A stretch of 64,000 nt of DNA from Ostrea edulis. Its lineage: Eukaryota. The position numbers were made by a program, and so were the translations under genes. The DNA lies in contig NC_079170.1 in the NCBI RefSeq assembly GCF_947568905.1, positions 14,322,001 to 14,386,000 of the forward strand. The letters run 5' to 3'. Of the stretch, positions 226 through 51,930 are shown in pieces (position 1 is the stretch's first letter; the number at the start of each line of letters is the position of its first letter). The notes under the pieces were generated by a model. It was given only the letters and a program-made list of their open reading frames with translations. It was not told where the DNA came from and searched no databases.

Positions 226-559
226 CTTCTATGCTGCGGTATTCCCATCCGCTCCCATTGTAATTGATTGCTATTTCACTTTCCCCTAGAAATTTCCTAA
301 GGAGTCTGCAATGCATTAAGCTTGAACTATACAAATATCCTACACAGACTGGATCGTTTAGGTAGCATTTGATGGTACAGGCTTGAAACGATAAACCCTC
401 GAAAAAAATAAAGTAGTATGAGGCATTCTTTGGAAGGTTCCCATCAAATAGCGGCTCTCGTTGATAACGCACGTATTTTAAAGCTCTGGTGAATCCAGTC
501 TGTAAAAGGATAATGAACACCATGCTATTATATATAATCTCTTTTCTGTAGCCCACCAT
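226..559 (-). CDS. First coding exon: signal peptide + PAN/Apple-like domain (gene continues off the left edge)
   Basis: MVGY...hydrophobic VFIILLQTGFTRA, then C-x3-C-x6-C-x2-YLY-x6-C (CTIKCYLNDPVCVGYLYSSSLMHC). Phase-1 donor GAAG|GTAAAG at 226/225; 334 nt = 111 codons + 1. Paralogous to 8174-8513 and 44212-44552. Confidence 0.8.
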
Positions 560-810
560 ATTTATCTGTTCGAGAACGGCATGAAATGTGGAGATGCTTC
601 CTCTTTGAAAACGTTTAAGAGAATAACTTTAATCTGTATCGCTGTTTCTTATATATTCCCCAAGAGATGAATTTAACAAATACATTTTCAATGTAGCTTA
701 AATTATTAATGATATACAAGTAATGAAACCATGGTTTAATTCACATAGTAAGTGGAGCTTAGCAGTTTTCATGATTCTTTAATAGCGTAAGTAATTTTCC
801 AACCACTTTG

Positions 811-814
<4 letters not shown>

Positions 815-857
<43 letters not shown>
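815..857. repeat. (TC)n microsatellite
   Basis: About 21 perfect TC units. Confidence 0.95.
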
Positions 858-863
<6 letters not shown>

Positions 864-899
864 ATGTCAACACATAAATCCAACAGTGTTCTACTTTCT

Positions 900-1770
900 A
901 AACGTGTTGGATTTAAAAATATGCCAAGACAACATGAGTGTTGACCACTGTTATTGAAACCACATATTTTCGACGCAATCCATATCTTTATCGATCATGT
1001 GATGTATAGTTATTTACACGTACAAACAGTTTTCATGCACGTGTTTTTTTTTTTTTCGTTTTTTTTTAAAAACAGAAAGATGACACGTTGTTACAAAAAC
1101 AACTGTAAAGCAGTGGTGAATATTTAGTTAAATATATTTTCAAAATACGAATATTCCATGTCATTGTGACGGTTACAACTCCCACTCAATATCGTTAGGA
1201 AGGAAATAATGTATTTTAGAGTGTTACCGCTCTGGGAATGGATCCGACATTGCACACATTTTCTCACAAAATCTAAGATTTGGCGCAGGTGAGCTGAAAG
1301 GATTACCTGAGTGTACCATTCATTTGACCATATAGTGAAATTACTAAAAGAAGGTTTGAAATTCTACCATGCGTAAATCTTAAAATGACTATTCTGTTAC
1401 CGACAAAGTAAGTTTGGGCAAAACTAAGTAGATTAGAAAAAAACCAGTATGCTTTTCAAATTGTTCTCATTGTTTGGTCGTCTTCGTCACAGGGTGCTGT
1501 CCTGTTTGGGGGTATCATAATTGATCAACAAACTGCATTAGATTTGTAGATTCAAACTGAACAGCTTTCATCATGCATTTACATAATAGTTTCGACAAGT
1601 CCATCAACGATCTTTTATGAATCTTTTTTTCTTCCGTAGAAAGGTACTATGTTTAGGCATATTGAACAGATTTATAGAAAACTGCCTACTTTCATCCTTC
1701 ATATTTGAAAAGTATCCATTATGCAGATCATCAAAACTGTATTTCGAATCTCATTTCACCGAGTAAGTAC
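900..1770. other. Intronic block paralogous to 48780-49630
   Basis: Collinear matches such as ggattacctgagtgtaccatt, ccgacaaagtaagt, gaaaagtatccattatgcagat in both places. Confidence 0.8.
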
Positions 1771-1779
1771 AATATATCA

Positions 1780-2290
1780 AAACATGAAGATAATGAACAG
1801 TGGTCAATCTCATAACTCCCATGAATAATACAAAATTAAGAGTAGGGCAAACAGGGATACTTGGACATAGCACAGGTGGCATCAGATACTCAGGAGGCAC
1901 GAGTGTCCCCCGTCAACCGGCCACTCCTGGCGGGAATCCTATACTCCGATCAGGCAAACGGAGGAATTCGAAGTTCAAACCAATGTGCGAAGAACGACTT
2001 AATTTGATATGAAACAAATCAGACAGCATTTGAACCAATTAATGGTTTGATTGGTAAATTAGATCGTTATAAAGACCGAAAAATCTGCGAAAAGTTACTT
2101 TGAACGGGACTATTGAAACTCCTGTAACATCAACTCATTGTCAGTAGCCTGTCTCAATTTAAAAACTGACCATAAGCATAATATACTCCTGTGTATCGAC
2201 TCAGTTGAGAGACATAAACACCACATGCAGGTGATAATGGAATATTGCAACATAAATATGGGGAAATAATGATGGAGAAACTGTTCTTGT
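1780..2290 (-). mobile_element. Old Penelope-like (Naiad-type) fragment: RT C-terminus + 3' UTR
   Basis: Degenerate FSIINFPYLCSNIPLSPAYGVYISQLIRY-like sequence followed by the family 3' UTR. A copy sits at the same position in the paralogous block (49630-50100). Confidence 0.8.
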
Positions 2291-2374
2291 TCTACTTTTC
2301 TTCGCATGTTATTTCACGTCACATTTAAGAAATGTTCACTCATATCGAATAAATACATGCATAGCAGTCATTAC

Positions 2375-2594
2375 CATAGCCGTCTTTTCTGTTGTAAAAA
2401 AAGTACATTTTTTATGATAGCCAGTCCTCCTAAGTTTATAGTTATCCAAGGGTGAGGTTCAAAGTTCGTTATGAATAGCTCCGTCCATGTCGATGTATCT
2501 GTGCAACCATCAACACTTGCCAGAAGAGTGGTGTTGGTTATCCATGGATAAATTGAACTTGAACTCATCATCTTACCAAGAGCCAAATTATTCA
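2375..2594 (-). pseudogene. F-type lectin (FTP/fucolectin-like) exon, N-terminal half, with +1 frameshift
   Basis: Acceptor cttgtag|TG at 2594 and donor TATG|GTAATG at 2375. Translates VNNLALGK...ASVDG...PWITINLGGLAIIKNVL-YNRKD. 220 nt versus 219 nt in the paralog; the extra base lies in an A7 run near 2396-2402. Confidence 0.8.
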
Positions 2595-3439
2595 CTACAA
2601 GATAATATTACAAAATGGATATCACAAACTGATTAAAATTTCTTTGATGTACTACAAGCGGTTTTCTTTTTCAAATTAGTGAATGACTACGTCAAATAAT
2701 TCTTATTTTACGATGGTCTTTTCTAAACATCAAATTGCATGCATCTTTGTTGTCTCATATTCCACAAAGCTATTGAAAATTTACATTCTATGCAAGATGC
2801 CGTCACAAATAATTATGATATCGATATTAAATCTGGCTGCTGCTGTGACGATTATTTTTCAGGGTAACCAAGAACATGTACCAGATGGGGCTAATGCTAT
2901 AAAGGAGAATATGGCATACAATGTACAATCAGCATATTACTATATTCACTAAAACGGAACGCATCAATCTTATAATTCCTAATAAGGATATCAAATCAAG
3001 AGTAGGACAAACACGGACCTGAGAGAGCAGGTCTTATTTGTAAATTAGATCGGTATAACAACCATAAAATTTGCGAAATGCTGACTTTACAGGAAACTGT
3101 CGATTGCGGATGAGCTCATTGGACGAATACAATGTGTCTTAATTCGATCACTGAAAAAACCGTTGATTAGCAAGCCCAAAACAATAAACATCTCTGGTGT
3201 GTCCAGGGGCCCGTGTTTGCCCAACTACCTATTCTGTATTGCTTATAGGAGTTATGAGATTGATCACTGTTCGTTATCTTCACCTTGCATGTAAGTTGCA
3301 GTGTAAATACGTTTATACATTTAATGAAATATCAATGCAAGTGTTTTTGTATCTGTTTAGCCATCTCTTTGTAAACCTTTCCGTTTATCCCGAGGAGGGA
3401 CAGGTCGTCCCGACAATTCTAATTGCTCATGTCGTTGGT

Positions 3440-3790
3440 CATTATAGTGAACTGGTTGTTTTACATTCCATCGATAACTTGTCACTCATATTGAGACGTC
3501 ACCAGCTGTAGGTGGTGTACAACAAATTTAGACCTATGCTTAGCACTCATGGTCGTAGGGTTTTGTAACTTGTTAACGCTTGTCGCTATCCGGGACGTCC
3601 GTTTCTATGGTCGTCTCCACAGCACCCGTAATTATCACCTCTAAAGACCAAACGCTTGGGAAAGGAGCAATCTCTTCCTATGTTAACGTCTTAGGTTTTA
3701 CGCGGCCATGGTGCTAGCGGGATTCCAACTCATGACTTACCACTAACGAAGCGAACACTCAATCACTAAGCTACCACGACCAGTCATGTT
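3440..3790 (-). mobile_element. tRNA-derived SINE
   Basis: The minus strand begins with a tRNA-like head (TAGCTTAGTGATT A-box-like, GAGTTGGAATCC B-box-like). Its 3' part (agcataggtctaaattt, ggtgacgtctcaatatgagtga) resembles the SINEs at 8.6 and 41.5 kb. Confidence 0.7.
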
Positions 3791-6550: not shown

Positions 6551-8173
6551 AGTCTCATAAAAGGAATTCAAAATAGAGAGTTGGACAAACAGGGACTCCT
6601 GGGTATACCTGAGTTGGGATCAGGTGTCGAGGGTAAATACATGTAGGCGTCGCCTGTCAACTTCACACACACCCGCTGTGAGCCCTTTATTTTGATCAGG
6701 TAAATAGAGTTAACTGTAGCTATCTTCAATGTGCCAAGAACAGTCTAACAATCGATATGAAACATGTTAGACAGCTTTGACGCAATGGCAGGTTATATAT
6801 ATTTTTTAACTCGAGACACGAAAACTTGACAGTGCCCTAAATTTTGAAAATCACAGCAATAATACCGTGTGTCTCCCCCATTCGCTGGAATAACTGCCTG
6901 ACACCCACTTTGAGGTCACCTGATTATGTAAAAACATTTGTGTTAAAGACCCCAAAATAATACCGTACAGTTTCTTCACGAATCACTGGATCTGGGCAAG
7001 CTTATCTATGGCCATAGTTATCTACCTGAAATTAACCTGGCCAAAAGATAAGGGTGATGTATAATGAGCTGACATACAGTCTACATCTCCCTTCAGTTGT
7101 CGACAGGTCAATGTTATCAAAATTCTGGTATATTCGGCTTCCTCAAGATCTAAACAAGCCCGGTTATTATTGACTGTTATTGTTATCAAACACCTCTTTT
7201 GGGTAGCTGCAGACTGCAGTTTCTGCAGATGTCACTCCATCTGAGATTTATTGTTTTTAATGTTTGATTGACAGACGGTTTACCATTGATCACGATACAG
7301 ATAAAATTTGGTGTTGTTAACTTAAAATTGGGTCTTTCATGAGGTATCTAAGCTGTGAAAAGTATGTCACGTAAATGGGTCACTCTTGTGTATCGGTCTT
7401 GTTGATGGGTTGTTACATGTGAAAGGAAAAGATAACGAACAGTGATGTACACACCGTTAGCGTAGGTCTGCTATGCTTCCATTTCCATTGAATTTTCGGA
7501 TTAGGTTTACGATGCTCTTGTGATCGCTATTGAAATTTCTAGTAGTTTGTGAAAACAATTATCACTAGTATCCCTTAGTTATCGTCTTGGGTAAATATAT
7601 TTGTTGCCGAGTACTACATAGTGTATATCCAGTTGCATGTACATGTATATAGACATGTCCCTGAAATGTCTCCGAGCGACCGGAAATTTCTAATAATTAA
7701 TCGCGCGGGATATGTTGCCATGAAATGTTAGAGAACTTTTTTTTTTAATTTATCTATATTTAACGACATGTATAGGATACAAAACCTGCCTTGGAAAAAG
7801 AAACAATAAATAATGACATGTATAACTTATGAAATTATTGTCCGACTTGTATCTCTGTTTAGTCATACTGCAAATGCTAGGAAGGGAAACGTCACATTTC
7901 AAACTTTACCTATAGCTTCATCAAATTGTTGATATTGCTAAATTTCAAACATTCATTTCAATACTGATGGCGAAAATACTCACTTACCCTTGCTCTGGCC
8001 ACATACTAAAAGAATTATTTGAATACTATTATCCAGGGCTCCGTGTTTGCCCAACTATCTATTTTGTATTGCTTGTAGGAGTTATGAGATTGATCACTGT
8101 TCGTTATCTTCACCTAACATTGATACACGTAGTATCAATAACAGTGGATGTTTAGAATGTCTGCTCACTTTAC

Positions 8174-8513
8174 CTTCTATGCTGCGGTATTCCCATCCAC
8201 TTCCATTGTAATTGTTTGCTATTTCACTTTCGCCCAGAAATTTCCTAAGGAGTCTGCAATGTATCAGGCTTGAACTATACAAATATCCTACACAGAGTGG
8301 ATCGTTTAGGTAACATTTAATGGTACAGGCTTGAAAAGATAAACCCTTGAAGAAATTAAAATAGTACGAGGCATTTTTTGGTAAGATCCCATCAAATAAT
8401 AGCTCCCGTTGATAACGCACGTGTGTTAGAGCTCTGGTGAACCCGGTCTGTAAAATAATAAGCACCATCATGCTATTGTATAGAATCTCTTTTCTGTAGC
8501 CAACCATATTCAT
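8174..8513 (-). CDS. First coding exon: signal peptide + PAN/Apple-like domain, probably spliced to the FTP exon at 2594
   Basis: MNMVGY...CTIKCYLNDPLCVGYLYSSSLIHC. Phase-1 donor at 8174/8173 (340 nt) is compatible with the phase-1 acceptor at 2594 (G|TG = Val). Confidence 0.8.
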
Positions 8514-11864: not shown

Positions 11865-12630
11865 CATGTTCGCATTGGGTCAAATGCTGTCTGACGTGTT
11901 TCATACCGATTGTTAAGCCGTTCTTGGCACACTGATTTTGACTGCGGATAACTCCGTTTACCTGATCAGGATATGGGGCTCGCGGCGGGTGTGGCCGGTC
12001 AACAGGGGATGCTTACTACTCCTAGGCACCTGATCCCACCTCTGGTGTGTCCAGGGGTCCGTGTTTGCCCAACTATCTATTTTGTATTGCTTGTAGGAGT
12101 TATGAGATTGATCACTGTTCGTTATCTTCACCTTGCATGTATATATTCTAAAGATTATTGTAAGAGATATACACAAAAATTCCATTAAATTAACAATGTT
12201 TTAAAAGGAAGGTAATTCAACGCGTATTACCTAACTTGTATACTTAAAAAGTGGTCATGGAATTTGTACACATTGTAAAGGACATCCTGATGGTGCCTCA
12301 TGAAAAAAAAAAGAAGAAAAAATATTGACGAGTTATTTTTGACCACATCGTCCCGCATGTCCTTAACGTGAAAGGTGAAGATAACAAACTATGATCAATC
12401 TCCTAACTCCTATAAGCAATACAAAATAAATTTGGGCAAACACGGACGCCTGGATATACCAGAGGTGGGATCAGGTGCCTAGGAGGAGTAAGCATCCCTT
12501 GTCGACCGGTCACACCCGCTGTGGGCCCTATATCTTGATCAGGTTAACAGAGTTATCCGTAATCAAAATCAGTGTGCTAACAACAGCATAACACTCGGTA
12601 TGAAGCACATCAGATAGTATTCAAATGTAT
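11865..12630. mobile_element. Two oppositely oriented Penelope-like 3' fragments (11865-12140 +, 12370-12630 -)
   Basis: Near-consensus gggctc(a/g)cggcgggtgtg...cctaggcacctgatcccacctctgg...gatcactgttcgttatcttcacct. Confidence 0.9.
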
Positions 12631-18881: not shown

Positions 18882-20114
18882 ATGTGTTATATAATTTTAG
18901 ATTGGCACATAGAGGTTTATGGTATTCCAATAGATTTCGAAACGGTGCAAACTGATGATCTGGCTAACAAGCTACGTAAATTCTTCTGCGAGGCAAAACC
19001 GAAAGGATCCAGTAAATCAAGATACATAATGGAAGTACAAAGTGGCTATTACCACAAGAACACACTAAAAATATCAGAACAGCAATAAATAGGCATCTGC
19101 AGGACATATGTTGCTCTATTGACATTGTGCGGGATAAGGAATTCAAGTCAACCAATCACACATTAGATGGAATGTTGAAAACTATGACCAAAATTGGTGC
19201 ATCAAGGCCCACTAAACACAAGCAGATCATAAATACTCCAGATCTTGATAAGATATCCTCTACAGACAGCCTCCTACTCTCCACTTGTCCTCCGACAGTG
19301 TGTCTGGTATCACCTTTCGATCCATTTTGTTACACGCGGCCTGGAATTCCATCACCAGTTGCGTCGTGATTCCTTTGATTTCCACAATGATGAAAATGGT
19401 CTCGAGTATGTGACATTGAGGCAGGAAACACAGCAAAAACATTTCCAGGGGGGGGGGGGGGGTATAGGATCTGAAGAGGCCCCAGGTGACAAAAGGATGT
19501 ATTCTTCCCCTGAAATCAAAACATGCTCAGTTAAAATGTTGCGTTTGCTATTGAAAAAAAATGCATCCTATCTGTTTAACACCTGTGTGAAGGAGGTTTT
19601 TACCTTCTCAGCTTCAAGATTAGATGTTTGGTATTCTGTGAAACCTCTTAGCAAGAGAACCTACAGTGGATTCATGGCTGACATATCTAAATCTGCTAAA
19701 TGTGCCAACGTTTACACTCCCCACTGTTTGCAGGCAACAGCCATAACTGCCATGAGCGAGGCTGGTTTCGAGGCTCGAAAAACCATGTTCATGTCAGAGC
19801 ACCGTTGTGAGTCTTCATTAAAGTCCTACAACAAAAATCTTTCATGCGAACAAAAACTCTCTGTCAGTTCGTGTTTATCTCCTCTTATTCATCCTGTAAG
19901 TCAACGAAAGCAACCTACCTGCACGTCATCTAAATATGTCGCTACAGCCACGAGGCCTGGTGATGAACATGCCGTCGTTCCATTCCAAACCATGGAAAAA
20001 CATGACCAAGAGCTGAACATCAACTTGATCCATCCATCCTCCGTAATTTCACTCAGATCCTCTGAATTTATGTCCAATTCTGTGTTCAACAATTGTGTTT
20101 TCAACTTCAAATAA
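18882..20114 (+). pseudogene. DUF3504/tyrosine recombinase ORF with two frameshifts
   Basis: LRKFFCEA...(I)RTAINRHL...HKQII...VWYHLSIHFVTRGLEFHHQL...WYSVKPL...YTPHCLQATAITAM...MSEHRCESSLKSY. The HxxR arginine reads Gln. Frameshifts near 19075 and 19255. Confidence 0.8.
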
Positions 20115-22510: not shown

Positions 22511-22678
22511 NNNNNNNNNNNNNNNNNNNNNNNNNNNNNNNNNNNNNNNNNNNNNNNNNNNNNNNNNNNNNNNNNNNNNNNNNNNNNNNNNNNNNNNNNN
22601 NNNNNNNNNNNNNNNNNNNNNNNNNNNNNNNNNNNNNNNNNNNNNNNNNNNNNNNNNNNNNNNNNNNNNNNNNNNNNN
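22511..22678. other. Assembly gap (168 N)
   Basis: Run of N. Confidence 0.99.
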
Positions 22679-30907: not shown

Positions 30908-32833
30908 TCACTCTACAGGTACTCTCAACAATGCATCTGAAATGATATTTTCTCTACCTTTGATATGCCTAATGACAATGTTATGTTCTTGCAACTCTAA
31001 ACTCCACCTCATTAATCTCTGATTCTTGTTTCTAATTTTGTGTACAAAGGTAAGAGGATTATGGTCAGCAAATACAACAACTGGATGTACAGATGAATAT
31101 AAATAGACATCAAAATGTTACAGTGCCAATAACATAGACAAACACTCTTTTTCTATGGTAGAGTAGTTTCTTTGACATTTTGAGAACGTTTTAGAAAGAA
31201 TAAGCAACAGGATGGCAAACAAAATTTTCATCTTCCTGTAATAACACAGCACCACATCCTACATCACTAGCATCAATTTGCATCACAAATTCTTTATCAA
31301 AATTGGGAGATGAAAGAACTGGAGAGACCATGAGAATGTCTTTTATTTGTTCAAAGGCCTGTTGGCGTGTTTCATTGCATTTAAACTTACTATTCTTTTT
31401 TAAAAGACATGTCAATGGCTTTGCAATGGTTAAGAAGTTTGAACAGAACTTCCTATAGTATCCAACCATTCCCAGGAATCTCATGAGTTCTCTCTTACAT
31501 TGTGGTAGAGGGAAATTTGTAATCGCATCAACATTAGCAAGGACATGCTTCGCATGGCCATTACCAACAATATGGCCCAAATACTCGAAAACTGCATGAC
31601 AAAATTCACTTTTAACAAGACTAACAGTCAAGTTTGCATCTGATAATTTTACAAACAAGCCCCTAATATGTGACAAATGTTCTTCAAAAGTATTGCTATG
31701 CACTATCACATCATCAATATAAGCTTCACAATGATCTAAGTTACACAACAAAAAATGGCTTCAAAGGAGCGCGAGGGATTTTTTTTATTGAGTTTCTCTA
31801 CGACTTGGCACACATGGCAAGACTTACAGTAGTCCACTATATCCCTTCTCATCTTTGGTCAGAAGAAGTGAGCCAAGACTTTATGGTAGGTTTTCTTGAC
31901 ACCCAAGTGACCCGACATTGGTGTGTCATGGGCGAGACCTATGACTATTTTACGGTATGCCCTAGGTACTACAATCTGATGGTGAATCTGCCACTTATCT
32001 TCTACTAAAGCATCTGAGGGACGCCATTTTCTCATGAAAACACCCTGATTTTTATAATAACAAACAGGGACCTTATATGTCTCCTCTGGAGACAAAACCT
32101 GTTCATTAAGACCTTGCAATTCAGCATCCGTCTCCTGTTCGGATATCAACTTATCTCTAGTAAAAGGAGTTTTGTCTAACATTTCCTGTAAACCAAACAC
32201 GTCGTTTTCAGACTGAGACTGTTGGTTCTCAGAAGATTAACTTTCTGCTTTTAACAGATCTTACAAAAATGTCTCATTGAGACCTAAAAAAGAGTCATCT
32301 CCTATATCTAACTTCTGACTTACCGTCTGTTCGGCATGCCCAAGATTCTCAGCCATAGCCCTTGTCAATGCACAAGAAGGAAACAATTCTTTATTCTCTT
32401 CATCCAAAATAAGACTAGGCTTTTCACAAATAATCGGGTCAGGTACAACCTTACCTCCCGCTAAATCATTTCCTAACAAACGAGAAACCCCCTTAACTGG
32501 TAAAGTAGGTCTGACCCCTACCACTACATACCCAGAGACTAAATCTGACTTCAAGTGTATTTCATGAAGATGAACTTTAACAATTCCTAACTCTACACCC
32601 TGAATCAACACATCAGAACCAGTGTGTGTCTTCTCAGACAGTGGCAGCACGCCCTCTAATAACAAAGATTGAGAAGCACCTGTATCCCTCAATACTCTAA
32701 TAGGGTGAAAGTCAATACCATTTACAGACACTAAACCTTTAAATACAAAAGGTCTAAATTCCTCTCTAAGTACATCATGCTCTGGCTTTGGCTTAGCATC
32801 CTCAAACCTACTACAGGCAAATTTACCTGTCAC
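30908..32833 (-). pseudogene. pol: pol remnants: protease (32261-32833), integrase Zn-binding N-terminus (about 31760-32200), RT C-terminal half (31191-31751), RNase H (30908-31200)
   Basis: LRDTGASQS; AHDTPMSGHLG...CKSCHVCQ; AYIDDVIV...YLGHIVG; IDASDVGCGAVL; YSTIEKEC...DHNPL...IKGRENIISDAL. Contains stops and frameshifts. Confidence 0.9.
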
Positions 32834-32879
32834 AGATGTAAGGGCACTAGGACTTGGCTGGGTATCAGTATTAACAGGC

Positions 32880-34122
32880 CTTTTCTTCTGTAATGCCCAA
32901 CATTCTGACTTAATGTGACCCTTCTTTTTACATTAGTTACAAGTTGGAATGTGCTTGAATGTTTCAGTATTCTTGAAATCATTACCTTTCATCTCCGAGT
33001 AGCCTAACTTAAACGAGTTCCTTGTGTAGTCTCTGGCCCTCCTCGAGAACCATCAGAGTTGGTAATTTCCTGTTGATTTTTGGGTTTTACAAAAGACACC
33101 CTATGAGTAAGTGCATAGTCATTTGCTGCAGTCGCAGCTTGTTCTAGATTTTCAACTTTCTGTTCATCTAAGTATGTTCTAATTTCAGGATGAAGGCAGT
33201 TTTCGAATTCTTCAACCAAAATAATTTGTTTCAACCTTTCAATGTCTGAACCAACATTTTTAGAAGTGCACCATCTATCAAACATATTTTGCTTTTCCCT
33301 TGCAAATTCAACATGAGTTTGTTCATTTAGTTTCTTGAAATTCCTAAATTTCTGTCTATAGGCTTCAGGTACAAGTTCATATGCCTTTAAGTCATTTTTC
33401 TTAATCACATCATAATTTGTACTTTGATAAAGTGACAATGCTCCATAGACTTCTCTAGCTTTGCCAACAAATGCACTCTGTAATAATAGTGGCCAGAATT
33501 CTTTTGGCCAGTTTAAATTCTCTGCAATTTTCTCAAAATGTATGAAATACTTATCCACATCTTTCTCTTGAAATTTAGGAACAAGTCTTATGTTCTTTGT
33601 CACATCAAAGTCAGATTTTGATCTAGCTCTAACTTCACCCTCTACATCATATTTCAACTTTTGAGTCTCAAATTCCAATTGTTTAAGTTGTAACTCTTGT
33701 TCTCCATCATGTGCATTTTTCTCTCTTTCAAATTCACGTCTTTCTCTCTCCTGTTCAATTTCTAGTTTCTTTAATTCTAATTCATACTGAAAATTTCTTT
33801 TTTCTATTTCAACATGTTGAAAATCTACAACCAATGATATTGCTCTTTCATCCAAAATTTCCTGTTGAACCAAATATTGTACAGCAGCATTTCTGATTTC
33901 TATTTTCCGTGCACTACGTTTCACATCTAACCCAAACTTTGTCACAAACTCAAACAGTTCATCTTTTTTCAAGGTTTCAAGTAACCGCGCTTGTGGCGTT
34001 TCCAGAAAAGTATCCAAGTTAAAAACCATCTTAACTGGTGTGTTCAGAATTAAATCAACTTCCCAATTATATAATTTCTTGTGATCAAAATATACGAGAT
34101 ATCGCTTTTGAAAAATACCCAC
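32880..34122 (-). pseudogene. gag: gag with SCAN-like region and broken CCHC knuckle
   Basis: ORF 33004-34122 (PKFQEKDVDKYFIHFEKIA, PEAYRQKFRN, LVEEFENCL...ANDYALTH). After a frameshift, C-N-*-CKKKGHIKSEC near 32900-32945. Confidence 0.88.
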
Positions 34123-34160: not shown

Positions 34161-34163
34161 ATT

Positions 34164-35746: not shown

Positions 35747-35981
35747 TTACAGGGACCAATAGTAGCAATAAAAGAGCTTGTAGTTCCGTTCCCCGTTCAC
35801 CGGTCCGTATGGATGATTTCCAGACACGCTATTGCTGTTGTTGTCGTCCTCATCATCTGTATACACGGTTTCTTCTCTGACCTCCATTCCCTCAACATGT
35901 TGGCAGTGATTGGTATATCTCAAAAGATAAAACGGCTTAGTTCTTGGAAGTCGAATTTCCGTTGAGTAGGAACCGTCATTT
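35747..35981 (-). CDS. ApeC (apextrin C-terminal domain) gene, terminal exon
   Basis: Acceptor atttcag|A, phase 2. (R)NDGSYSTEIRLPRTKPFYLLRYTNHCQHVEGMEVREETVYTDDEDDNNSNSVSGNHPYGPVNGERNYKLFYCYYWSL*; 235 nt. Confidence 0.92.
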
Positions 35982-36462: not shown

Positions 36463-36580
36463 CTGCAACAGTAGTCAATTCTTGTATTCGAATTAAAATT
36501 TCCACTTGGTAATTCTCCCCCTGCAGTGTTTTCATTTCCAGAGTTTTCGTCATCCCAATGAATGCTTCCACTTTGGAAAG
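36463..36580 (-). CDS. ApeC gene, internal exon 3
   Basis: ctttaag|CT...TGCAG|gtacat; (A)FQSGSIHWDDENSGNENTAGGELPSGNFNSNTRIDYCC(R); 118 nt, phase 1 to 2. Confidence 0.9.
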
Positions 36581-36765: not shown

Positions 36766-36900
36766 CTCCAGAAGGACATGCACTTCCATGCATCAGAATA
36801 CAGTAGTTCCCACCGGGCCAATAACCCTCGTCATTAAAATCATTGGGATCCTTGGTGCAGTAAGAGAAATTCAGATTACTTGGATTGGTCCCACTGATGC
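36766..36900 (-). CDS. ApeC gene, internal exon 2
   Basis: ttattcag|GC...GGAG|gtgatt; (G)ISGTNPSNLNFSYCTKDPNDFNDEGYWPGGNYCILMHGSACPSG; 135 nt, phase 1 to 1. Confidence 0.9.
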
Positions 36901-38237
36901 CTGAATAAGCATATCAATTTTCAAATGAAACAATTCTGCATTATATATATCTGAAAAAGTTTATGTACCCAACAACATCATAAAGGCATATTCAGAAATG
37001 TTTTGCACTTCTACTGCATAGAGTTATATATTTAGTCACATGGAATGAAACGTCTCAACTTTAGTAAGGTTTTATTGAAAATATGATTTTATATTTGATT
37101 TCTTCATGACTTGCAGAAGTCAACATTCTAAATTGGCATTCTTGCATGATGCTCCTTAAAGCTTTACAAGGCATAGTAAGTTTACAATATAGGTCTATGT
37201 CACACGACGAACGCTTATAAAATGCTGTCAGAGACTGTTTCCTCTTTATGTTGTGTTCCTAGAGTATTAGTACTAAGATAAATATATCTTCTTTTCATGC
37301 TTGTGGCGTCACCTGGGTAAATTAAGATGGGCTTATTCAAAAGTTGATATTTTCTCTCTGACCAAGTTAATCAAATTTATACAAGAAATAATTCATACAT
37401 TTGTAACATGTTCGGATTCCATTCAGTTTCTTTGTGTCCCTTCGAAAATTATTCACTCATATTGAGATGTCACTAGTTGTAGATGGTGCACCAGCATTTT
37501 ATCCGATGCAATTCGCATAGGAGAGTTGCAGCAAAGGTTCTTTATCGTATCAACTTCAAAAGACACCTGATGGTTAGGTCCACACTAACCTTTTTTTTTT
37601 AAATTTAGCTTATTGTTTTTATGTCTTCTGATGTATTACTAATCCATTTCGAAATATAACACTTGCTTTTTGTATGGTTTGACATTTAAAGGACAGATCG
37701 AATGTTGCTAAAGTTTTCATTTTTTCAGCAAAAGCAATTCTCGGCATGACCAAAATTACTTTCAGTGTGTTTTGAATAAAATATTTTACGTTGTTTTCGA
37801 AGTTGAACGCAATGAACTTCAAATCCTGCGATATGTACATTTACTTTCGGCATTTTTGCGCCATTATGTGTGATGTGATATTGGGTTTTGAAAACATTTA
37901 TTAGCTATGTCATAAACTTTAGATTTAATGGACAAAAAGATAAATATCATGTTAACGGCTTGTAAATAGCATTGCATCAGGGTGTTTTGTGCCGTTTAAG
38001 GGTGTACTAGCCTTCCATAGAAAGGTTTAGACCGAGCCTTTTCAATGTTTTAAAGGAAGTGAGAGGAAAAAGATGTGGATTATTTATCTATCCGCACATG
38101 GACTTTGTCTTAAAAACCCCAGTCAACTTTGTCTATCGAGATGTACATTGGACAGAGATCCAGATAAACTGCGAGCAATGGCTGTATCGAAGCCAAACAT
38201 TGCTAGGCCTACAGCATATGCATTCTGTCCTAGCCTT

Positions 38238-38390
38238 CAAATACAATACCCACTCACATACAATATCCACTCAAATACAATACCCACTCAAATACAATAC
38301 CAACTCAAATACAACACCCACTCAAATACAATACCCACTCACATACAATACCCACTCAAATAAAATACCCACTCACATACAATACCCACT
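38238..38390. repeat. 17-bp minisatellite, 9 units, in an ApeC intron
   Basis: Unit caaatacaatacccact; 153 nt = 9 x 17. Confidence 0.95.
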
Positions 38391-39480
38391 CGCACCAGCT
38401 GAGCTTCACTTTGTAGTAACATAAAACTTGTGCTCTCACTATCTGGCAACTGGTCCATTTTACAAAAAAAATCAAAGATAAAAAATAATTATACTTTCAA
38501 TTATAGATAATTAAATATTGTATTTCATTACTTTGAACTGACTTATAATGCTTTCATTATTTGATTGAACTCGTATTATCAAGTACAGTATAATGTCGTG
38601 TCCTCACATCCTCTGGTGTGTCCAGAGGTCCGTGTTTGCCCAACTATCTATTTTGTATTGCTTGTATGAGTTATGGGATTGATCACTTTTCGTTATCTTC
38701 ACCTTTCATCTTCATGACGTGCAGATCACAATTCAATCAGGATATTAGAATTACTTTGCCAAAATAAAGTATTGTGATTTCAAATCTAAATTTGATTATT
38801 CTTGTTTTTCTATCTTCCAATCGCATCCGTGACAGCGAATGGGCCTAGCTGTCAACGACGTAACGTATCAGAATTTGTCTACTCCAAATATGAATACTAA
38901 TACCACTGTTCATTTTTTAAAAGAAACCAAAAACTGCAACGCCATCACAGATGTTTAAAGTAATAACATTACCAATTAATGTTTAAATAATTATCCATAA
39001 AACATTATTTACTCGCAATTGCCTATTTCAAACTCACTTTCTTCGCAACATTAGAGTATTTACATCGCTATTTGTATGCACTAGTGGCTAAATCATGTAA
39101 GACTCGGGAAATTTGTCAACATCGATATCAATGTTGTCCATGGTCAAGATTGATGAATAAATTCGGTCCCTAATAATTGAGTTTTATAATGATATATAAC
39201 ACTACTTTCACAATACCTTGATCGAAGAAGGTCGCATGTGATATCGCTGTACCACGTGACTACCTAGCTAGAGGCTTAGATTTTAGTTCGGATGGTAGCT
39301 AATTATCGCAATATTAGAATTAATTACTATAATCATCAGAAAGACAAAATGCATTTAACTTTGTATACTTTGGAAACATGTCCGTTAAGAGTTGAAAACT
39401 TTGTATGCGCATTCAGGAGTATTTGCTTACTTGGAGTACCTGTATCAATGTTATTATTCATAAGTTAATTGCTTGTTTAC

Positions 39481-39618
39481 CATAAAAGTGATGTCCGTAT
39501 TCTACTTGGTTTTCGTTATCACCGTTTGCATTGTCCTGGTGTCTCCATCCCTCCAGCCACCCCGATGGACATCCAGTATTTGGCTTTACCAGAGTATATG
39601 TTCCACCTGGCCATTTCA
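39481..39618 (-). CDS. ApeC gene, internal exon 1 (open frame, with an apparent compensated frameshift)
   Basis: attttcag|TG...TATG|gtaaac; (V)KWPGGNIYSGKAKYWMSIGWLEGWRHQDNANGDNENQVEYGHHFY(G); 138 nt, phase 1 to 1. Confidence 0.88.
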
Positions 39619-44211: not shown

Positions 44212-44552
44212 CTTCTATACCTGCGGTATTCCCATCCGCTTCCATTGCAATTGTTTGCAATTTCACTTTCAACCAACAATTTCCTAAGAAGTCTGCAATG
44301 TATCAGGCTTGAACTATACAAATATCCTATACAGATCGGATCGTTTAGGTAGCATTTCATGGTACAAGCTTGAAACGATAAACCCTCGAAAAAATCAAAG
44401 TAGTATGAAGTATTCTTTGGAAGGATCCCATCAAATAACGGCTCTCGTTGATAACGCACGTATGTTAGAGCTCTGGTGAATCCGGTCTGTAAAATTATAA
44501 TGGACATCATGCTAATATATATAATCTCTTTTCTGTAACCAACCATATTCAT
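44212..44552 (-). CDS. First coding exon (signal peptide + PAN/Apple-like), probable exon 1 of the ApeC gene; carries a +1 base near its 3' end
   Basis: MNMVGY...CTMKCYLNDPICIGYLYSSSLIHC. 341 nt to the conserved GTAAAG donor versus 340 nt in the 8.5-kb paralog (CGC AGG T ATA GAA G). Confidence 0.75.
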
Positions 44553-47107: not shown

Positions 47108-47362
47108 CTAGACAAAAAGTCCATTGACGACAATTTCTTCCAACACTAGAGCGTTCCTTCCTCCACTATCATTTAGATCGTCTGATATGTAGTTTAGCTC
47201 AACAATTTTTGCGGTGACGTACGTTCCATAAAGCAGTGTCCCGCATTCTTTGGTGTGAACTTTTCCAGTTTGACTCGGTCCTACGAATAAACCACAAAAT
47301 TCCATCTCCGACCAAGTGAACGAATTCCCTACTCTAATTCTCCACATTGTGCAACCAGTGAC
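47108..47362 (-). pseudogene. F-type lectin terminal exon (C-terminal half of FTP domain), +1 frameshift near 47337
   Basis: ttttttag|GT; (G)HWLHNVE-IRVGNSFTWSEMEFCGLFVGPSQTGKVHTKECGTLLYGTYVTAKI...ALVLEEIVVNGLFV*, matching the FTP pattern IRVG...C...C...G.YV...L.L.EV.V.G. Confidence 0.82.
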
Positions 47363-48610: not shown

Positions 48611-50197
48611 TGTACATCAACATTTAACATTTAAATTGTTGCTCTTTACAAATTGATAGGTTGTGTGACTGAAAACTTTAGAATGAAAATTGTTGAAACG
48701 ATAAGTTGATACGTTTTCTGTTTATTTTTTATTTAATGTATAGAATACGTCGAGTCAAAGAAAGAAAGATATCGTTTATAGAGGTTTTATGCATTGGGAA
48801 GACAACCAAAGCATAAATGGTAGATCATCAAAACTATTAAAGAATCTCATTTAAGTGTTAAGCGTACACGTGACGTATAGTTATATACATGTACACGCAT
48901 TCTTCATACAAATTGTTTTTCAAAGATTGAAAGATGAAACAATGTGTTAAAAACGAATGGAAAGCAGTGATGATTCTTAAGTTAAAGATACTTTCATACT
49001 GAAAATGTCATGTCATTTTGGCGTCTGTAATCCCCACTTAATCCTGTTAGGAAAGAAGGAGTGTCTATTAGAGGAGAAACGTTCTGGAAATGGATCCGCA
49101 ATTGTAAACAATTTATCCCAAAATCTAGGGTTTGGGGCGGCTAAAAGGATTACCTGAGTGTACCATTTGATCAAATAAAGACATTACTTAAAGAAGGTAG
49201 AACGTTCTGTCTTAACTAAATCTTAAATTGACTATATTTTGTTTCCGACAAAGTAAGTCGCGGCAAACCTGAATAGAGTAGAAAACAAACAGTGTGCTTT
49301 TAATGGTGATTTCAAACCGTTCCCATTGCTTGGTCTTCTTTGTTACAGGTGCTGTCCTGGTGCAGAATATTGTATCAGACAACCAAACTTGTATTGTAGC
49401 AGCCCATGAGACTTCCCATCTAATTTGCAGATTGAAAATTCATAACTTTCATCATCCATTTACAAAAAAGTTTCAACAATTCCATCAACAATCTTTCTAA
49501 CATTGAGAATTCTTTTTCTTCTGTAGAAAGATACTATGTTTAGCCATTCTAAGCATATTACAGAAAACTATGGACTTTCATCCACTCTATTTGAAAAGTA
49601 TCCATTATGCAGATTTCGAATCTCATTTCACCAAGCAAGTGCCGTAAAGATAATGAAGAGTGATTAATCCCATATCTCCCACAAAGAATGCAAAATTAAG
49701 AGTAGGGCAAACACTGACCCCTGGACATATCACAGGTACATGTAGAACCAGGTACCCAGGAGGTGCAAACATCCCCCGTTGACAGGTTTCTCCCACTGTG
49801 AGGCCCACACCGAGAAAATGGAGCAATCTCCAGTCAAAATCAGTGTGCGACGAACGATCTCATTTTGTATGGAACATATCAGATATCATTTTACCCAATG
49901 AATGGTTGTTTTGATAACTTTGATCGTTAAAATACTATAACATTTGCAAAATGCTACTTTAAACAACACAACTTATTGTCATTGTCATGTCTTCATTTAA
50001 AACTGACCATACGCAGAATAAGATCTTGCGTATTGAATCAGTTGAGATACATAAACAAAACATTCAGGTGATAATGGAATATTGGTACATAAATATAAGA
50101 AAGTGTCGATGTAGAAGTTGTTTTTGTTTTACTTTTCTCTGCGTGCATCTAAGAAGTTTTGCTAACATCCAGTAAATACATGCAAAACAGACATTAC

Positions 50198-50416
50198 CAT
50201 TTTCGTCTTTTCTGTTGTAGAGAAGTATATTTTTTATGATAGCTAGTCCTCCTAGGTTTATAGTTAGCCATGGATAACGTTCATATTCAGTTTGAAAAAG
50301 CTCCTTCCATGTAGATGAATCTGTGTGGCCATCAACACTTGCCTGACGAGTTGAATTCGTCATCCATTGGGGAAGTGAACTTGAATTTACCGTCTTACCA
50401 AGAGCCAAATTTTTCA
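50198..50416 (-). CDS. F-type lectin exon, N-terminal half (frame intact)
   Basis: tcttatag|TG...AATG|gtaatg; 219 nt, phase 1 to 1; KNLALGK...ASVDG...FQTEYERYPWLTINLGGLAIIKNILLYNRKDEN. Confidence 0.82.
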
Positions 50417-50823
50417 CTATAAGAATATTGAAGAAAAGATATCAGATTGATTGAAATTTACTTGTTGTACTAAATTCGGGTTTCTGTTTACATTAGTTTA
50501 TGACTGCAGTCAGTGTGTATATGTCGAATGATTCAAATTTTACAATTTTTGTTTCTTAACATCAACTTACATGTATCATGTATGAAAGGAGTGATCAATT
50601 TCATAACTCCTATACGCAATGCAAATTAGAGAGTTGGGAAAACACGGACCCTTGAATATACTAAAAGTGGGATCAAGTGCCTAGGAGGAGTGAGCGTCAC
50701 CTATCAACCGGTCATAACCGCTTTGAGCCCAATGTGTCTTTGTTGTCTCTTATTCCACAAAGTTGGTGAAAAAATATATGGTATGTAACGTGACATAAAA
50801 CATGGCAGGCAACATTTGACCAA

Positions 50824-50963
50824 NNNNNNNNNNNNNNNNNNNNNNNNNNNNNNNNNNNNNNNNNNNNNNNNNNNNNNNNNNNNNNNNNNNNNNNNNNNNN
50901 NNNNNNNNNNNNNNNNNNNNNNNNNNNNNNNNNNNNNNNNNNNNNNNNNNNNNNNNNNNNNNN
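50824..50963. other. Assembly gap (140 N)
   Basis: Run of N. Confidence 0.99.
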
Positions 50964-51219
50964 TTTAAGAGAATGAAATAGCATTACTTAAAACAACAAA
51001 TTTAAATCGAATTTTAGAGATCTCTATCCATTCTGCTCGACGGCAATTTACGTGAATTGAAATCCTGAATACCAATATTGTGTACAAATCCCTAGATAGT
51101 TGTGAAACCTCCGCAATCAACTATCACTATTCCTTAGTAATGTCTTTCTAAAATGAAGTGCGGAAGAGGAGTGAGCGTCCACTGTCGACCTTTCAAAACT
51201 GTATCCAGTTACAGGTATA

Positions 51220-51440
51220 AAGCTGTTCTTGGCACACTGATTTTGACTGAGGATAACTCCGTTTACCTGATCAGGATATAGGGCTCACGGCGGGTGTGAC
51301 CGGTCAACAGGGGATGCCTACTCATCCTAGGCACCTGATCCTACCTCGTGTGCCCAGGGGTCCGTGTTTGCCCAAGTATCTATTTTGTATTGCTTATAGG
51401 AGTTATGAGATTGATCACTGTTCGTTATCGTCACCTTGCA
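51220..51440 (+). mobile_element. Penelope-like 3' UTR copy
   Basis: Near-consensus match. Confidence 0.88.
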
Positions 51441-51699
51441 TATAGACGTGACTCTGAAATGGCCGGATGTTTTGTTAAGATAATCGCGGGTGATATCTTG
51501 TCATAATGTGTTAGCATTTTTTTTTATTATTTGTCTACATTTAACGAAAATCAGTGTATTTTTTTCAAACTCTGTCATTCAAAATGAAACAATAATTAAT
51601 GTATCAGATCCATGAATAACTTGTAGATTTATTGTACGAATTGTATGTCTGTTTAATCATATTATACTTATATTTTCATAAATTTGTGGAGATTGTTAA

Positions 51700-51930
51700 A
51701 CTTCAAATATTCACTTCAACAGTGATGGTGTTCAACACTCATTTATTCTCGCTCTGGGCATACTGTAAATGGGGAAATGATCCTTCTTGTAGCCCACCAT
51801 ATTCACTTCTTCGAGAACGGCATGAAATGTGGGGATGTTTCCTCATCCAGTGCTTTAAATTCCTTTTATCAAAGAAAATAACACTTAGCTGCATTGCTGT
51901 TATTTATCTATTGCCCAAGAGATGGATGCA
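51700..51930 (-). pseudogene. PAN first-exon locus with about 400 bp deleted (only ATG GTG GGC TAC AAG AAG left)
   Basis: 51740-51770 matches 100-135 and 51779-51845 matches 537-605 of the intact copy; the intervening exon body and donor are absent. ATG at 51800. Confidence 0.8.

What the first reader, a model, noticed from the sequence alone, without database searches (positions are those of the whole stretch)
226..51930. Modular lectin cluster: one PAN/Apple first exon paired with either an F-type lectin or an ApeC module, all joined through phase-1 introns
Seen: four paralogous signal-peptide+PAN first-exon loci on the minus strand with homologous flanks. Downstream lie two unrelated modules, FTP (50416 and 2594) and ApeC (39618). 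Both modules open with a phase-1 acceptor followed by TG, and the two intact PAN donors (226, 8174) are phase 1. Known: FTP and ApeC domains are invertebrate pattern-recognition modules. Inference: a reusable 5' cassette has been shuffled onto different recognition domains, and frame compatibility would let any intact PAN exon splice to any downstream module. This is the best candidate here for an under-described diversification system.
Basis: partly seen in the sequence, partly recalled or inferred. Interest (0 to 1): 0.72.

Follow-up and report, generated by a model that had tools for sequence, protein, structure and literature searches.

The report
Oyster PAN-headed lectin gene array
This is a partly decayed tandem array of flat-oyster (Ostrea edulis) secreted lectin genes in which one signal-peptide-plus-PAN first exon has been joined during evolution to different sugar-binding domains; each copy has its own partner, and nothing indicates that partners are swapped when the genes are transcribed.

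Summary
Three full PAN-like first exons lie on the minus strand, ending at 226, 8174 and 44212. A fourth, near 51.8 kb, is only a deletion remnant. The F-type-lectin exons open at 2594 and 50416 and the ApeC module opens at 39618, all with phase-1 acceptors.

The evolutionary reading holds and extends further. Across the Ostrea edulis genome, 29 such leader exons have C-type lectin (18), F-type lectin (4) or ApeC (2) exons as the nearest detected same-strand module within 20 kb downstream; five have none. The donor is phase 1 in 25 of the 26 copies whose exon end could be read.

The mix-and-match splicing idea is not supported, and the geometry argues against it. Both intact donors (226, 8174) lie downstream, in the direction of transcription, of the ApeC and 50-kb FTP modules, so they cannot splice to them in cis. 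Every PAN exon has its own partner.

Most window copies are damaged:
- PAN3 carries a +1 frameshift.
- The FTP exon at 2594 carries a +1 frameshift and has no second FTP exon.
- The 50-kb FTP gene has lost its PAN exon and has a stop in its last exon.

The one clearly intact gene that uses a window exon (PAN1) finishes outside the window, and NCBI annotates it with exactly that pairing. This is ordinary birth-and-death evolution plus exon shuffling. The modestly new point is a cryptic PAN leader shared by three lectin classes.

The parts
226..559 (-). PAN1 first exon: ATG, probable signal peptide, PAN-like module. Intact, with a phase-1 donor after base 226. Its partner exons, FTPa and FTPb, lie outside the window at window coordinates -2307..-2531 and -4801..-5052.
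   Evidence: NCBI LOC125653607 (P0032) joins ...WEYRSIE to VNNLAL... at exactly this donor.
8174..8507 (-). PAN2 first exon, intact, with a phase-1 donor. An extra in-frame ATG lies at 8513.
   Evidence: dN/dS against PAN1 is 0.13.
2375..2594 (-). First F-type-lectin exon (FTPa) of the PAN2 unit. It is 220 nt rather than 219 because of one extra T in the T7 run at 2402-2396. That is a frameshift, so the donor becomes phase 2. No second FTP exon follows before PAN1.
44212..44546 (-). PAN3 first exon. c->gt at 44220-44219 adds one base, so the exon reads ...WEYRRYRR* and the donor is phase 2, out of frame with ApeC exon 1.
39481..39618 (-). ApeC exon 1: 138 nt, phase 1 in and phase 1 out.
   Evidence: Pfam ApeC positions 1-46, E 2.5e-5.
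36766..36900 (-). ApeC exon 2: 135 nt, phase 1 in and phase 1 out.
   Evidence: Pfam ApeC positions 53-92.
36463..36580 (-). ApeC exon 3: 118 nt, phase 1 in and phase 2 out.
   Evidence: Pfam ApeC positions 93-132, 38.8 bits.
35747..35981 (-). ApeC exon 4, ending in the TAA stop at 35749-35747.
   Evidence: Pfam ApeC positions 134-208, 72.1 bits.
51661..52038 (-). PAN4 remnant. It keeps the cassette's 5' flank and the first ~13 nt of the CDS. About 430 bp, covering the rest of the exon, the donor and the start of intron 1, are deleted; the joint is at 51787-51770. Homology then resumes with intron-1 sequence.
50198..50416 (-). FTPa exon of the PAN4 unit: 219 nt, phase 1 in and phase 1 out, open.
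47108..47362 (-). FTPb exon of the PAN4 unit. An extra A at about 47339 gives GHWLHNVEN followed by TAG at 47336-47334. The rest of the exon is otherwise conserved through to the normal stop at 47110-47108.
50824..50963 (.). Assembly gap inside intron 1 of the PAN4/FTP unit. It is not in any exon.

Best explanation
**What it is.** The window covers part of a tandem array on Ostrea edulis chromosome record C7 (about 14.28-14.41 Mb). The array holds genes for small secreted lectin-like proteins and is evolving by birth and death of copies.

**Gene structure.** Each gene opens with one exon that encodes a probable signal peptide and a divergent four-cysteine PAN/Apple module, ending in a phase-1 donor. 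This exon is spliced to that gene's own recognition domain:
- a two-exon F-type lectin domain in five units, or
- a four-exon ApeC domain in one unit, with a paralogue on C6.

**How the architectures arose.** They arose by recombination within intron 1. A cassette of about 0.9-1.3 kb (core promoter, exon, start of the intron) was placed in front of different domain-encoding exons, and whole units were then duplicated. The more distant members of the same leader family, mostly on C8, are followed by C-type-lectin exons.

**State of the window copies.**
- PAN1 belongs to an intact, annotated PAN-FTP gene whose remaining exons lie just outside the window.
- The PAN2 unit has a frameshifted FTPa exon and no FTPb exon.
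- The PAN3-ApeC unit has an intact ApeC module but a +1 shift at the end of the PAN exon.
- The PAN4 unit has lost its PAN exon and has a premature stop in FTPb.

**Likely function (inferred, not tested).** The C-terminal domain binds microbial glycan or peptidoglycan. The N-terminal PAN module supplies a second protein or carbohydrate contact, or drives oligomerisation, as needed for agglutination or opsonisation.
For: **One partner per PAN exon, same strand.**
- Searches show g0 and g1 with intact PAN/FTPa/FTPb exons and all junctions phase 1.
- The NCBI product P0032 reproduces the PAN1 -> FTPa -> FTPb junctions.
- PAN-ApeC is duplicated on C6, with collinear homology across the cassette and across the whole ApeC unit.

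**Extent of the cassette.**

**Family-wide picture.**
- 29 leader exons are present in the genome.
- The donor is phase 1 in 25 of the 26 copies whose exon end could be read.
- The nearest detected downstream modules are C-type lectin 18, FTP 4, ApeC 2, none 5.
- P0017 (leader + Lectin_C) is 100% identical to locus L016.
- Crassostrea has PAN-FTP paralogues.

**Domain identities.** PAN. FTP. ApeC.

**Lesions.**

**Selection.** dN/dS is 0.11-0.30 for the PAN exons, 0.29-0.50 for FTPa, and 0.36 for ApeC against the C6 copy, with dS 0.23-0.9. These are old duplicates that were under constraint for most of their history.
Against: - No transcript data were available, so expression and junction use are unknown, apart from what the two NCBI gene models imply.
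- The three 1-bp lesions could be assembly errors; one of them sits in a T7 run. If so, the PAN3-ApeC unit would be a working gene.
- PAN2 shows strong purifying selection (dN/dS 0.13) although its own FTP module is broken. A simple pseudogene reading does not explain this well.
- The PAN assignment rests on sub-threshold Pfam hits and on Foldseek E-values of about 0.03.
- The signal peptide was not tested with a predictor.
- Ligand binding and the role of the PAN module are inference only.
Confidence: 0.8

Rival explanations
1. **Alternative first exons on a small scale.** PAN2 (donor 8174) and PAN1 (donor 226) act as two alternative promoter-plus-leader exons for the single intact pair of FTP exons just left of the window. 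PAN2 would skip its own broken FTPa exon and splice across about 10.5 kb. The result would be two protein variants that differ only in the PAN module.
For: - PAN2 is intact, on the same strand and upstream of the g1 FTP exons, and its phase-1 donor fits their phase-1 acceptor.
- Its own unit lacks FTPb and has a frameshifted FTPa.
- Even so, PAN2 against PAN1 gives dN/dS 0.13 at dS 0.46, which indicates continued constraint.
- The NCBI model P0031 for g5 skips a damaged FTPa exon in frame, so skipping a 1-1 exon is at least modelled in this family.
Against: - No annotated protein of 107-341 aa carries PAN2.
- A pairwise dN/dS cannot date the loss of function, so the lesions may simply be recent.
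- No RNA evidence is available.
Confidence: 0.12
2. **The reader's model.** The locus is a combinatorial diversification system in which any intact PAN exon can be spliced to any FTP or ApeC module, giving a repertoire of leader-receptor combinations.
For: - All PAN donors and all first module acceptors are phase 1.
- FTPa and ApeC exons 1-2 are symmetric 1-1 exons.
- All four window units lie on one strand.
Against: - On the minus strand the order is PAN4 remnant, FTP, PAN3, ApeC, PAN2, FTPa, PAN1. The only intact donors therefore lie 3' of ApeC and FTP-50k, and cis-splicing to them is impossible.
- The PAN exons upstream of those modules are deleted or frameshifted.
- The leader exons differ by only 13-15%, so swapping them would add little diversity.
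- The only two annotated proteins that carry this exon pair it with exons of the same unit.
- Phase-1 compatibility is the general rule for exon-shuffled extracellular modules and holds across the wider C-type-lectin branch as well, so it is not a special feature of this locus.
Confidence: 0.04
3. **The lesions are assembly errors.** On this reading the window holds working PAN2-FTP and PAN3-ApeC genes, still as fixed pairs.
For: - All three frameshifts are single-base gains, one of them in a T7 homopolymer.
- The ApeC module is open across all of its roughly 208 codons, with dN/dS 0.36 against the C6 copy.
- Two assembly gaps show that the region was hard to assemble.
Against: - The PAN2 unit also lacks the whole FTPb exon, and the PAN4 unit has a 430-bp deletion in contiguous sequence. 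Neither can be a base-calling error.
- The PAN3 change is c->gt and is not in a homopolymer.
- No protein carrying PAN2 or PAN3 was found among proteins of 107-341 aa.
Confidence: 0.15

Closest known systems
Mosaic invertebrate lectins assembled by exon shuffling through phase-1 introns (class 1-1 extracellular modules; my own knowledge of Patthy's exon-shuffling rules)
   Same: - A signal-peptide or leader exon ends in phase 1.
- Symmetric 1-1 domain exons follow.
- The same module appears next to unrelated domains.
- Units are duplicated in tandem.
   Different: The shared module here is the first exon together with its promoter. A whole 5' cassette, rather than an internal domain, has been reused in front of three different carbohydrate-recognition folds.
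Short-form ApeC-containing proteins of molluscs (CgACP1, BgACP1; PMC9585378)
   Same: [quoted passage not shown] The tested oyster and snail members bind peptidoglycan and agglutinate microbes.
   Different: - That paper describes short-form ACPs as having no other discernible domain. In this gene the ~85 residues in front of ApeC fold as a PAN/Apple module and are homologous to the leaders of FTP and C-type-lectin genes.
- Which of the paper's nine groups this gene belongs to was not determined.
- The window copy is out of frame as assembled.
F-type lectins (Anguilla AAA 1K12, Morone FBP32 3CQO; review PMC5712786)
   Same: The C-terminal domain of the annotated product P0032 matches only F-type lectin chains in the PDB (E 4e-6 to 0.01). 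The PWW-like strand and the NR-x-D segment are conserved.
   Different: - The fucose-binding His (AAA His52) is Leu, Gln or Ile in these copies.
- AAA Arg86 aligns with Trp, with an Arg one position earlier.
- Canonical fucose binding is therefore doubtful.
- The domain is preceded by a PAN module.
Oyster sperm bindin, a combinatorial F-lectin (described in PMC5712786)
   Same: An oyster F-lectin gene for which alternative splicing and recombination are documented to generate variants.
   Different: Bindin varies the number of F-lectin repeats within one gene. Here separate genes each carry one domain, and there is no evidence of alternative splicing.
Variable-first-exon loci (clustered protocadherins, UGT1A; my own knowledge)
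   Same: Several promoter-plus-first-exon units lie in tandem on one strand, upstream of shared downstream exons. This would apply only to PAN2/PAN1 -> FTP.
   Different: Each unit here originally carried its own downstream exons. Any sharing would be a by-product of decay, and it has not been shown.

Membership tests
PAN/Apple module (Pfam PF00024 PAN_1, clan PAN) | Sequence match to the family profile above the curated threshold | tested here: not met
   The window exons have no Pfam hit at E<=1. 13 of 37 family members hit PAN_1 below threshold, best E 3.3e-4. P0014 scores 19.2 bits against a cut-off of 21.4. A family profile finds nothing in PDB sequences.
PAN/Apple module (Pfam PF00024 PAN_1, clan PAN) | Core four-cysteine pattern (two nested disulfides) flanking the central helix and hairpin | tested here: met
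   C61, C65, C72 and C84 are invariant in all 37 sequences, spaced C-x3-C-x6-C-x11-C. Disulfide pairing itself was not tested.
PAN/Apple module (Pfam PF00024 PAN_1, clan PAN) | PAN fold: a beta-sheet packed against one alpha-helix | tested here: met
   The AlphaFold model has pLDDT 83. Nearly all of the top 50 Foldseek PDB matches are PAN/Apple modules: HGF N domain, plasminogen, Sarcocystis SML-2, TgMIC4, Eimeria PAN, FXI and the leech antiplatelet protein. Probability is about 1.0 and TMq about 0.5, with the 29-residue leader included in the normalisation, but E-values are only about 0.03.
F-type lectin domain (FTLD/FTP) | Sequence homology to solved F-type lectin domains | tested here: met
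   P0032:31-187 hits 1K12 (E 4.4e-6), 3CQO (E 8.2e-6) and 3LE0/4GWI (E 0.01). The remaining hits, all E >= 0.17, are not lectins of this fold. The Crassostrea homologue P0003 behaves likewise. Pfam PF22633/PF00754 hits appear.
F-type lectin domain (FTLD/FTP) | Fucose-binding motif H-X24-R-X-D-X4-(R/K), i.e. AAA His52/Arg79/Arg86 (PMC5712786) | tested here: not met
   In the alignment to 1K12, His52 aligns with Leu in g1 and with Gln or Ile in the other copies. Arg79 and the Asp are kept (NRKD). Arg86 aligns with Trp, with an Arg one residue earlier.
ApeC domain (Pfam PF16977) | Full-length match to the ApeC profile | tested here: met
The four exons, scanned separately, cover profile positions 1-46, 53-92, 93-132 and 134-208 in order, scoring 24.6, 26.2, 38.8 and 72.1 bits against a cut-off of 26.5.
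ApeC-containing pattern-recognition protein (short-form ACP) | An intact secreted ORF (signal peptide + ApeC), and peptidoglycan binding | tested here: not met
   In the window copy the PAN3 donor is phase 2 and the ApeC acceptor is phase 1, so the join runs into a stop within ApeC exon 1. The C6 paralogue has a phase-compatible donor but a rearranged start. Binding cannot be tested with these tools.
Combinatorial or alternative-splicing diversification locus | One leader exon joined to several alternative downstream modules in transcripts | not testable with these tools
   No RNA data. Indirect evidence is against it: gene order on the strand, fixed pairs in the two annotated products, and the lesions.

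The most novel reading that the evidence does not exclude
Oysters have a lineage-specific secreted leader, a cryptic PAN/Apple module on its own promoter-bearing first exon. It has been used repeatedly as a common front end for three unrelated glycan-recognition folds: C-type lectin, F-type lectin and ApeC. At decaying array members it may still be in use as an alternative first exon, for example PAN2 splicing over its dead FTP exon to the neighbouring gene's FTP exons. The PAN module would then be a shared effector or oligomerisation handle for a whole class of oyster pattern-recognition proteins.
Probability: 0.25. Interest if true: 0.5.

Novelty: new variant of a known kind. Interest (0 to 1): 0.33.

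Why it matters
Bivalve immune-gene repertoires are large and poorly annotated. Many of their lectins are listed as uncharacterized, or as having no domain other than the recognition domain.

A single ~85-residue PAN-like leader precedes C-type-lectin, F-type-lectin and ApeC domains in Ostrea, and PAN-FTP genes also occur in Crassostrea. This gives a handle for grouping these genes. It also suggests a shared partner or oligomerisation mode that could be tested once for all three classes.

The result also corrects a tempting over-reading. Frame-compatible exons in a tandem array are the expected trace of exon shuffling. They are not evidence of a somatic or transcript-level diversification mechanism.

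Tried and rejected
**Searches that gave little**
- A Pfam scan of the window PAN exons found nothing, even at E<=1.
- A family profile searched against PDB sequences found nothing.
- A representative-library phmmer search with the PAN exon gave only 22 hits. Several were prokaryote-style ORF calls that read into intron 1, and none carried ApeC.
- No earlier scan notes exist near this place.
- Two literature searches found no description of a PAN leader on oyster lectins. This is weak negative evidence from two queries only.

**Searches that were blocked**
Partners were assigned from the coordinates of exon-level hits instead.
- The look-up of encoding contigs for P0032 was blank because the window's own genome is left out. 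For P0001 it returned only a 1.1-kb contig.

- Every exon was searched by reference, and the public proteins P0032, P0031, P0003 and P0017 stood in for the joined products.
- No annotated PAN-ApeC protein could be sought directly, because no single open frame is long enough to pass the length window. The search with P0031 residues 1-111 (length window 107-341 aa) found none.

**Ideas considered and rejected**
- The PAN4 truncation is not an artefact of the 50824-50963 gap. The deletion joint lies about 800 bp away, in contiguous sequence with collinear intron homology on both sides.
- No alternative donor or acceptor restores the PAN3-ApeC frame. Both usable donors are phase 2, and the next AG in ApeC exon 1 again requires phase 1.
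- The shared TG after both acceptors was considered as evidence of a common breakpoint. Four matching bases (TGAA) in a single comparison are not significant, and the C-type-lectin branch does not share them (P0017 sequence).

Full report
**Where the window lies.** The window is G000:C7:14322001-14386000 of an 895-Mb eukaryotic assembly. Two NCBI proteins that match window exons are named Ostrea edulis, and their contig length, 88,744,346, equals that of C7. The region is AT-rich (GC 0.30-0.39) and full of a short MITE-like repeat. All gene models here are my own, read from splice sites. They are guided by the homologous public proteins P0003 (Crassostrea lineage; named members), P0017, P0031 and P0032.

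**Check of the observation.** Self-BLAST and a four-way alignment show three complete copies of a 334-335-nt first exon on the minus strand: PAN1 559..226, PAN2 8507..8174 and PAN3 44546..44212. Homologous flanks start about 200-240 bp upstream of the ATG and run 0.35-0.7 kb into intron 1.

PAN3 carries c->gt at 44220-44219. The exon is therefore one base longer, reads ...WEYRRYRR-stop, and every usable donor is phase 2.

The fourth locus is a remnant. Homology to the cassette runs 52038-51788, covering the 5' flank and the first ~13 nt of the CDS. It then jumps to intron-1 sequence at 51769, so about 430 bp, including nearly the whole exon and the donor, are deleted.

The module acceptors are as reported:
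- tag|TG at 2594
- tag|TG at 50416
- cag|TG at 39618

All are phase 1 and all give a GTG codon at the junction.

**Assembly gaps.** The gap at 22511-22678 lies in intergenic or repeat DNA, 13-14 kb from the nearest exon of this system. The gap at 50824-50963 lies in intron 1 of the PAN4/FTP unit, about 800 bp from the deletion joint, and collinear intron homology to the PAN3 unit continues up to 51093. No reading frame crosses either gap. Only the physical linkage of the PAN4 remnant to FTP 50416 depends on the scaffold join.

**What the modules are.**

*ApeC.* The four exons are 39618..39481, 36900..36766, 36580..36463 and 35981..35750, followed by a TAA stop. Scanned one by one, they cover PF16977 positions 1-46, 53-92, 93-132 and 134-208 (for the genome-wide scan). 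Their phases are 1-1, 1-1, 1-2 and 2-end, and the module is open throughout.

*FTP.* The domain is split into FTPa (219 nt, phase 1-1) and FTPb (the last exon). The annotated O. edulis product P0032 has a C-terminal domain that matches only F-type lectins among PDB sequences: 1K12 at E 4.4e-6, 3CQO, and 3LE0. The Crassostrea homologue P0003 gives the same result. The fucose-binding triad given in PMC5712786 is not kept. AAA His52 aligns with Leu, Gln or Ile, and Arg86 aligns with Trp.

*PAN.* Pfam does not recognise the window exons. Three other lines support the assignment:
- An alignment of 37 family members has four invariant cysteines spaced C-x3-C-x6-C-x11-C.
- 13 of the 37 members give sub-threshold PAN_1 hits, and no other family recurs.
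- An AlphaFold model (pLDDT 83) finds PAN/Apple modules as nearly all of its top 50 Foldseek matches in the PDB, although E-values are only about 0.03.

I accept it as a divergent PAN module. The leader's hydrophobic N-terminus looks like a signal peptide, but this was not tested with a predictor.

**Who pairs with whom.** I extended the view 40 kb to the left and 20 kb to the right of the window and ran tblastn with exon peptides and with P0003. Reading along the minus strand from high to low coordinates, the order is:

| Unit | Leader exon | Downstream exons | State |
|---|---|---|---|
| g4 | PAN4 remnant (51.8 kb) | FTPa 50416..50198, FTPb 47362..47108 | PAN exon deleted; stop in FTPb |
| g3 | PAN3 (44.5 kb) | ApeC exons 1-4 (39.6-35.7 kb) | +1 shift in PAN3; ApeC open |
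| g2 | PAN2 (8.5 kb) | FTPa 2594..2375 | frameshift in FTPa; no FTPb |
| g1 | PAN1 (0.5 kb) | FTPa at -2307, FTPb at -4801 (outside the window) | intact |
| g0 | PAN at -27.2 kb | FTPa at -31.8 kb, FTPb at -39.5 kb | intact |

A sixth unit, g5, lies on the plus strand just right of the window, with PAN at 68.7 kb, FTPa at 82.1 kb and FTPb at 85.4 kb. So each PAN exon has its own module directly downstream.

A seventh copy on C6 is again PAN -> ApeC. Its homology to the window's PAN3-ApeC unit is collinear across the cassette and across the whole ApeC unit, from about 230 bp upstream of exon 1 to beyond the stop. The PAN-ApeC fusion therefore predates that duplication (dS 0.23, dN/dS 0.36).

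**State of the copies.**
- g0 and g1 are intact, with all junctions in phase 1.
- g2's FTPa has one extra T in a T7 run (2402-2396). The exon is 220 nt and frameshifted, and no FTPb lies between it and PAN1.
- g3 has the PAN3 +1 change. Joined to ApeC exon 1, the frame hits a stop within that exon, and I found no alternative splice site that restores the frame.
- g4 has lost its PAN exon. Its FTPb has an extra A at about 47339, giving GHWLHNVEN-TAG.
- g5's FTPa has an internal deletion.

The public database holds only two proteins of 107-341 aa that carry this exon:
- P0032 (LOC125653607) is PAN1, from an internal Met, joined to g1's FTPa and FTPb at exactly the predicted junctions.
- P0031 (LOC125655298) is g5's PAN joined directly to its FTPb, skipping the damaged 1-1 exon.

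Both are pairings within one unit.

**The wider family.** A six-frame search of the genome finds 29 leader exons: six close copies and 23 at 24-36% identity. The distant ones lie mostly on C8. In 25 of the 26 copies whose exon end could be read, the exon ends ...G|GT in frame, which is phase 1.

I compared their coordinates with exon-level hits for a C-type-lectin query (P0017:116-254), FTPb and ApeC. The nearest same-strand downstream module within 20 kb is C-type lectin for 18, FTP for 4 and ApeC for 2. Five have no detected module. For PAN2, the FTPb counted is g1's.

P0017 (leader + Lectin_C, 254 aa) is 100% identical to locus L016. Crassostrea gigas and C. angulata have several leader-FTP paralogues, annotated as uncharacterized or as F5/8 type C proteins. 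About ten further FTPb-like exons at C7:13.70-14.07 Mb have no leader exon nearby, so the FTP domain is also used with other N-termini.

**Interpretation.** A promoter-bearing leader cassette has been recombined, within intron 1, onto three unrelated recognition folds, and the resulting genes were then amplified in tandem.

The functional half is not supported. The two intact donors lie downstream, in the direction of transcription, of both the ApeC module and the 50-kb FTP module, so they cannot be joined to them in cis. The PAN exons that do lie upstream of those modules are broken. Every unit is a fixed pair, and the annotated products are within-unit pairings. The leader exons are 85-87% identical, so swapping them would add little diversity. 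Phase-1 compatibility is what exon shuffling leaves behind (my own knowledge of the exon-shuffling literature).

**One loose end.** PAN2 is under clear purifying selection (dN/dS 0.13 against PAN1 at dS 0.46) although its own FTP module is dead. Three explanations are possible:
- the lesions are recent;
- they are assembly errors, which cannot explain the missing FTPb;
- PAN2 now serves as an alternative first exon for g1's FTP exons, 10.5 kb downstream.

I give the third about 12%. It is the only form of module sharing that the geometry allows.

**Function (inferred).** By analogy with the tested short-form ApeC proteins, which bind peptidoglycan and agglutinate microbes (PMC9585378), and with F-type and C-type lectins, these are secreted recognition proteins. 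The PAN module, a fold used elsewhere for protein or carbohydrate contacts (for example the galactose-binding SML-2 among the structural matches), probably supplies a second contact or oligomerisation. None of this was tested. The loss of the canonical fucose triad means the FTP copies here may not bind fucose.

**Novelty and score.** Tandem lectin arrays, exon shuffling and pseudogene decay are ordinary in bivalve genomes. The modestly new point is that proteins listed as domain-less short-form ACPs or as uncharacterized share a cryptic PAN leader with C-type and F-type lectin genes. Two literature searches found no description of this. I rate it a new variant of a known kind, with interest about 0.33.

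Downstream DNA of the distant family members could not be fetched.

Noticed in passing
window 8032-8115, 12050-12133, 54445-54528, 3202-3285, 38621-38704 and at least 10 more sites: A short (~84-100 bp) repeat, 82-99% identical between copies, is scattered on both strands and often sits inside the introns of the lectin genes. It looks like a MITE. It generates spurious ORFs such as ...VCPTIYFVLLVGVMRLITVRYLHL and confuses homology mapping of the introns.
   Followed up: partly
window 31191-34122 (-): A fragmented LTR-retrotransposon-like element lies between the PAN2 and ApeC units. Its ORFs carry RT/RNase H (PF00078, PF17919), a weak aspartyl protease hit and a SCAN-domain gag-like protein.
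   Followed up: partly
window 19245-20114 (+): A 289-aa ORF carries DUF3504 and a weak phage-integrase (tyrosine recombinase) match, as in Crypton-derived sequences.
   Followed up: no
window 56174-57907 (+) and 60151-61449 (+): Two intronless B-box + coiled-coil + NHL-repeat (TRIM-like) ORFs of 577 and 432 aa are paralogous. The second lacks the first B-box region and ends before the last NHL repeats, so it may be truncated.
   Followed up: no
L032/L036, i.e. C7:14390740-14407625 (+), just right of the window: NCBI protein LOC125655298 (P0031) joins the PAN exon directly to the last FTP exon and skips an FTPa exon that has an internal deletion. The product would carry only half an F-type lectin domain, so this is either a gene-model artefact or a decaying gene.
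   Followed up: partly
L033/L037, C6:6226480-6226620 (+): The C6 PAN-ApeC paralogue has about three tandem copies of a ~43-bp segment spanning the start codon. The first ATG now runs into a stop, and only an internal Met (MVFILLQTG...) could start the leader.
   Followed up: partly
G000 C7:13.70-14.07 Mb: A second cluster of about ten FTPb-like exons, 57-63% identical to those here, has no PAN-like leader exon detected nearby. One ApeC-like exon (C7:13854488) lies 4 kb from one of them.
   Followed up: no
window 38060-38420, 58950-59340, 61776-62135: Short tandem or degenerate repeats give long spurious ORFs with periodic peptides (…YNTHSNTIPTQIQYPL…, …PPHHSYNPKS…, …VNYTSQYS…).
   Followed up: no
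ApeC exon 1 against exons 2-4, window against C6: Synonymous divergence between the two PAN-ApeC paralogues is much higher in exon 1 (pS 0.44) than in exons 2-4 (pS 0.10-0.16). This may point to gene conversion over the 3' part, or it may be small-sample noise.
   Followed up: no
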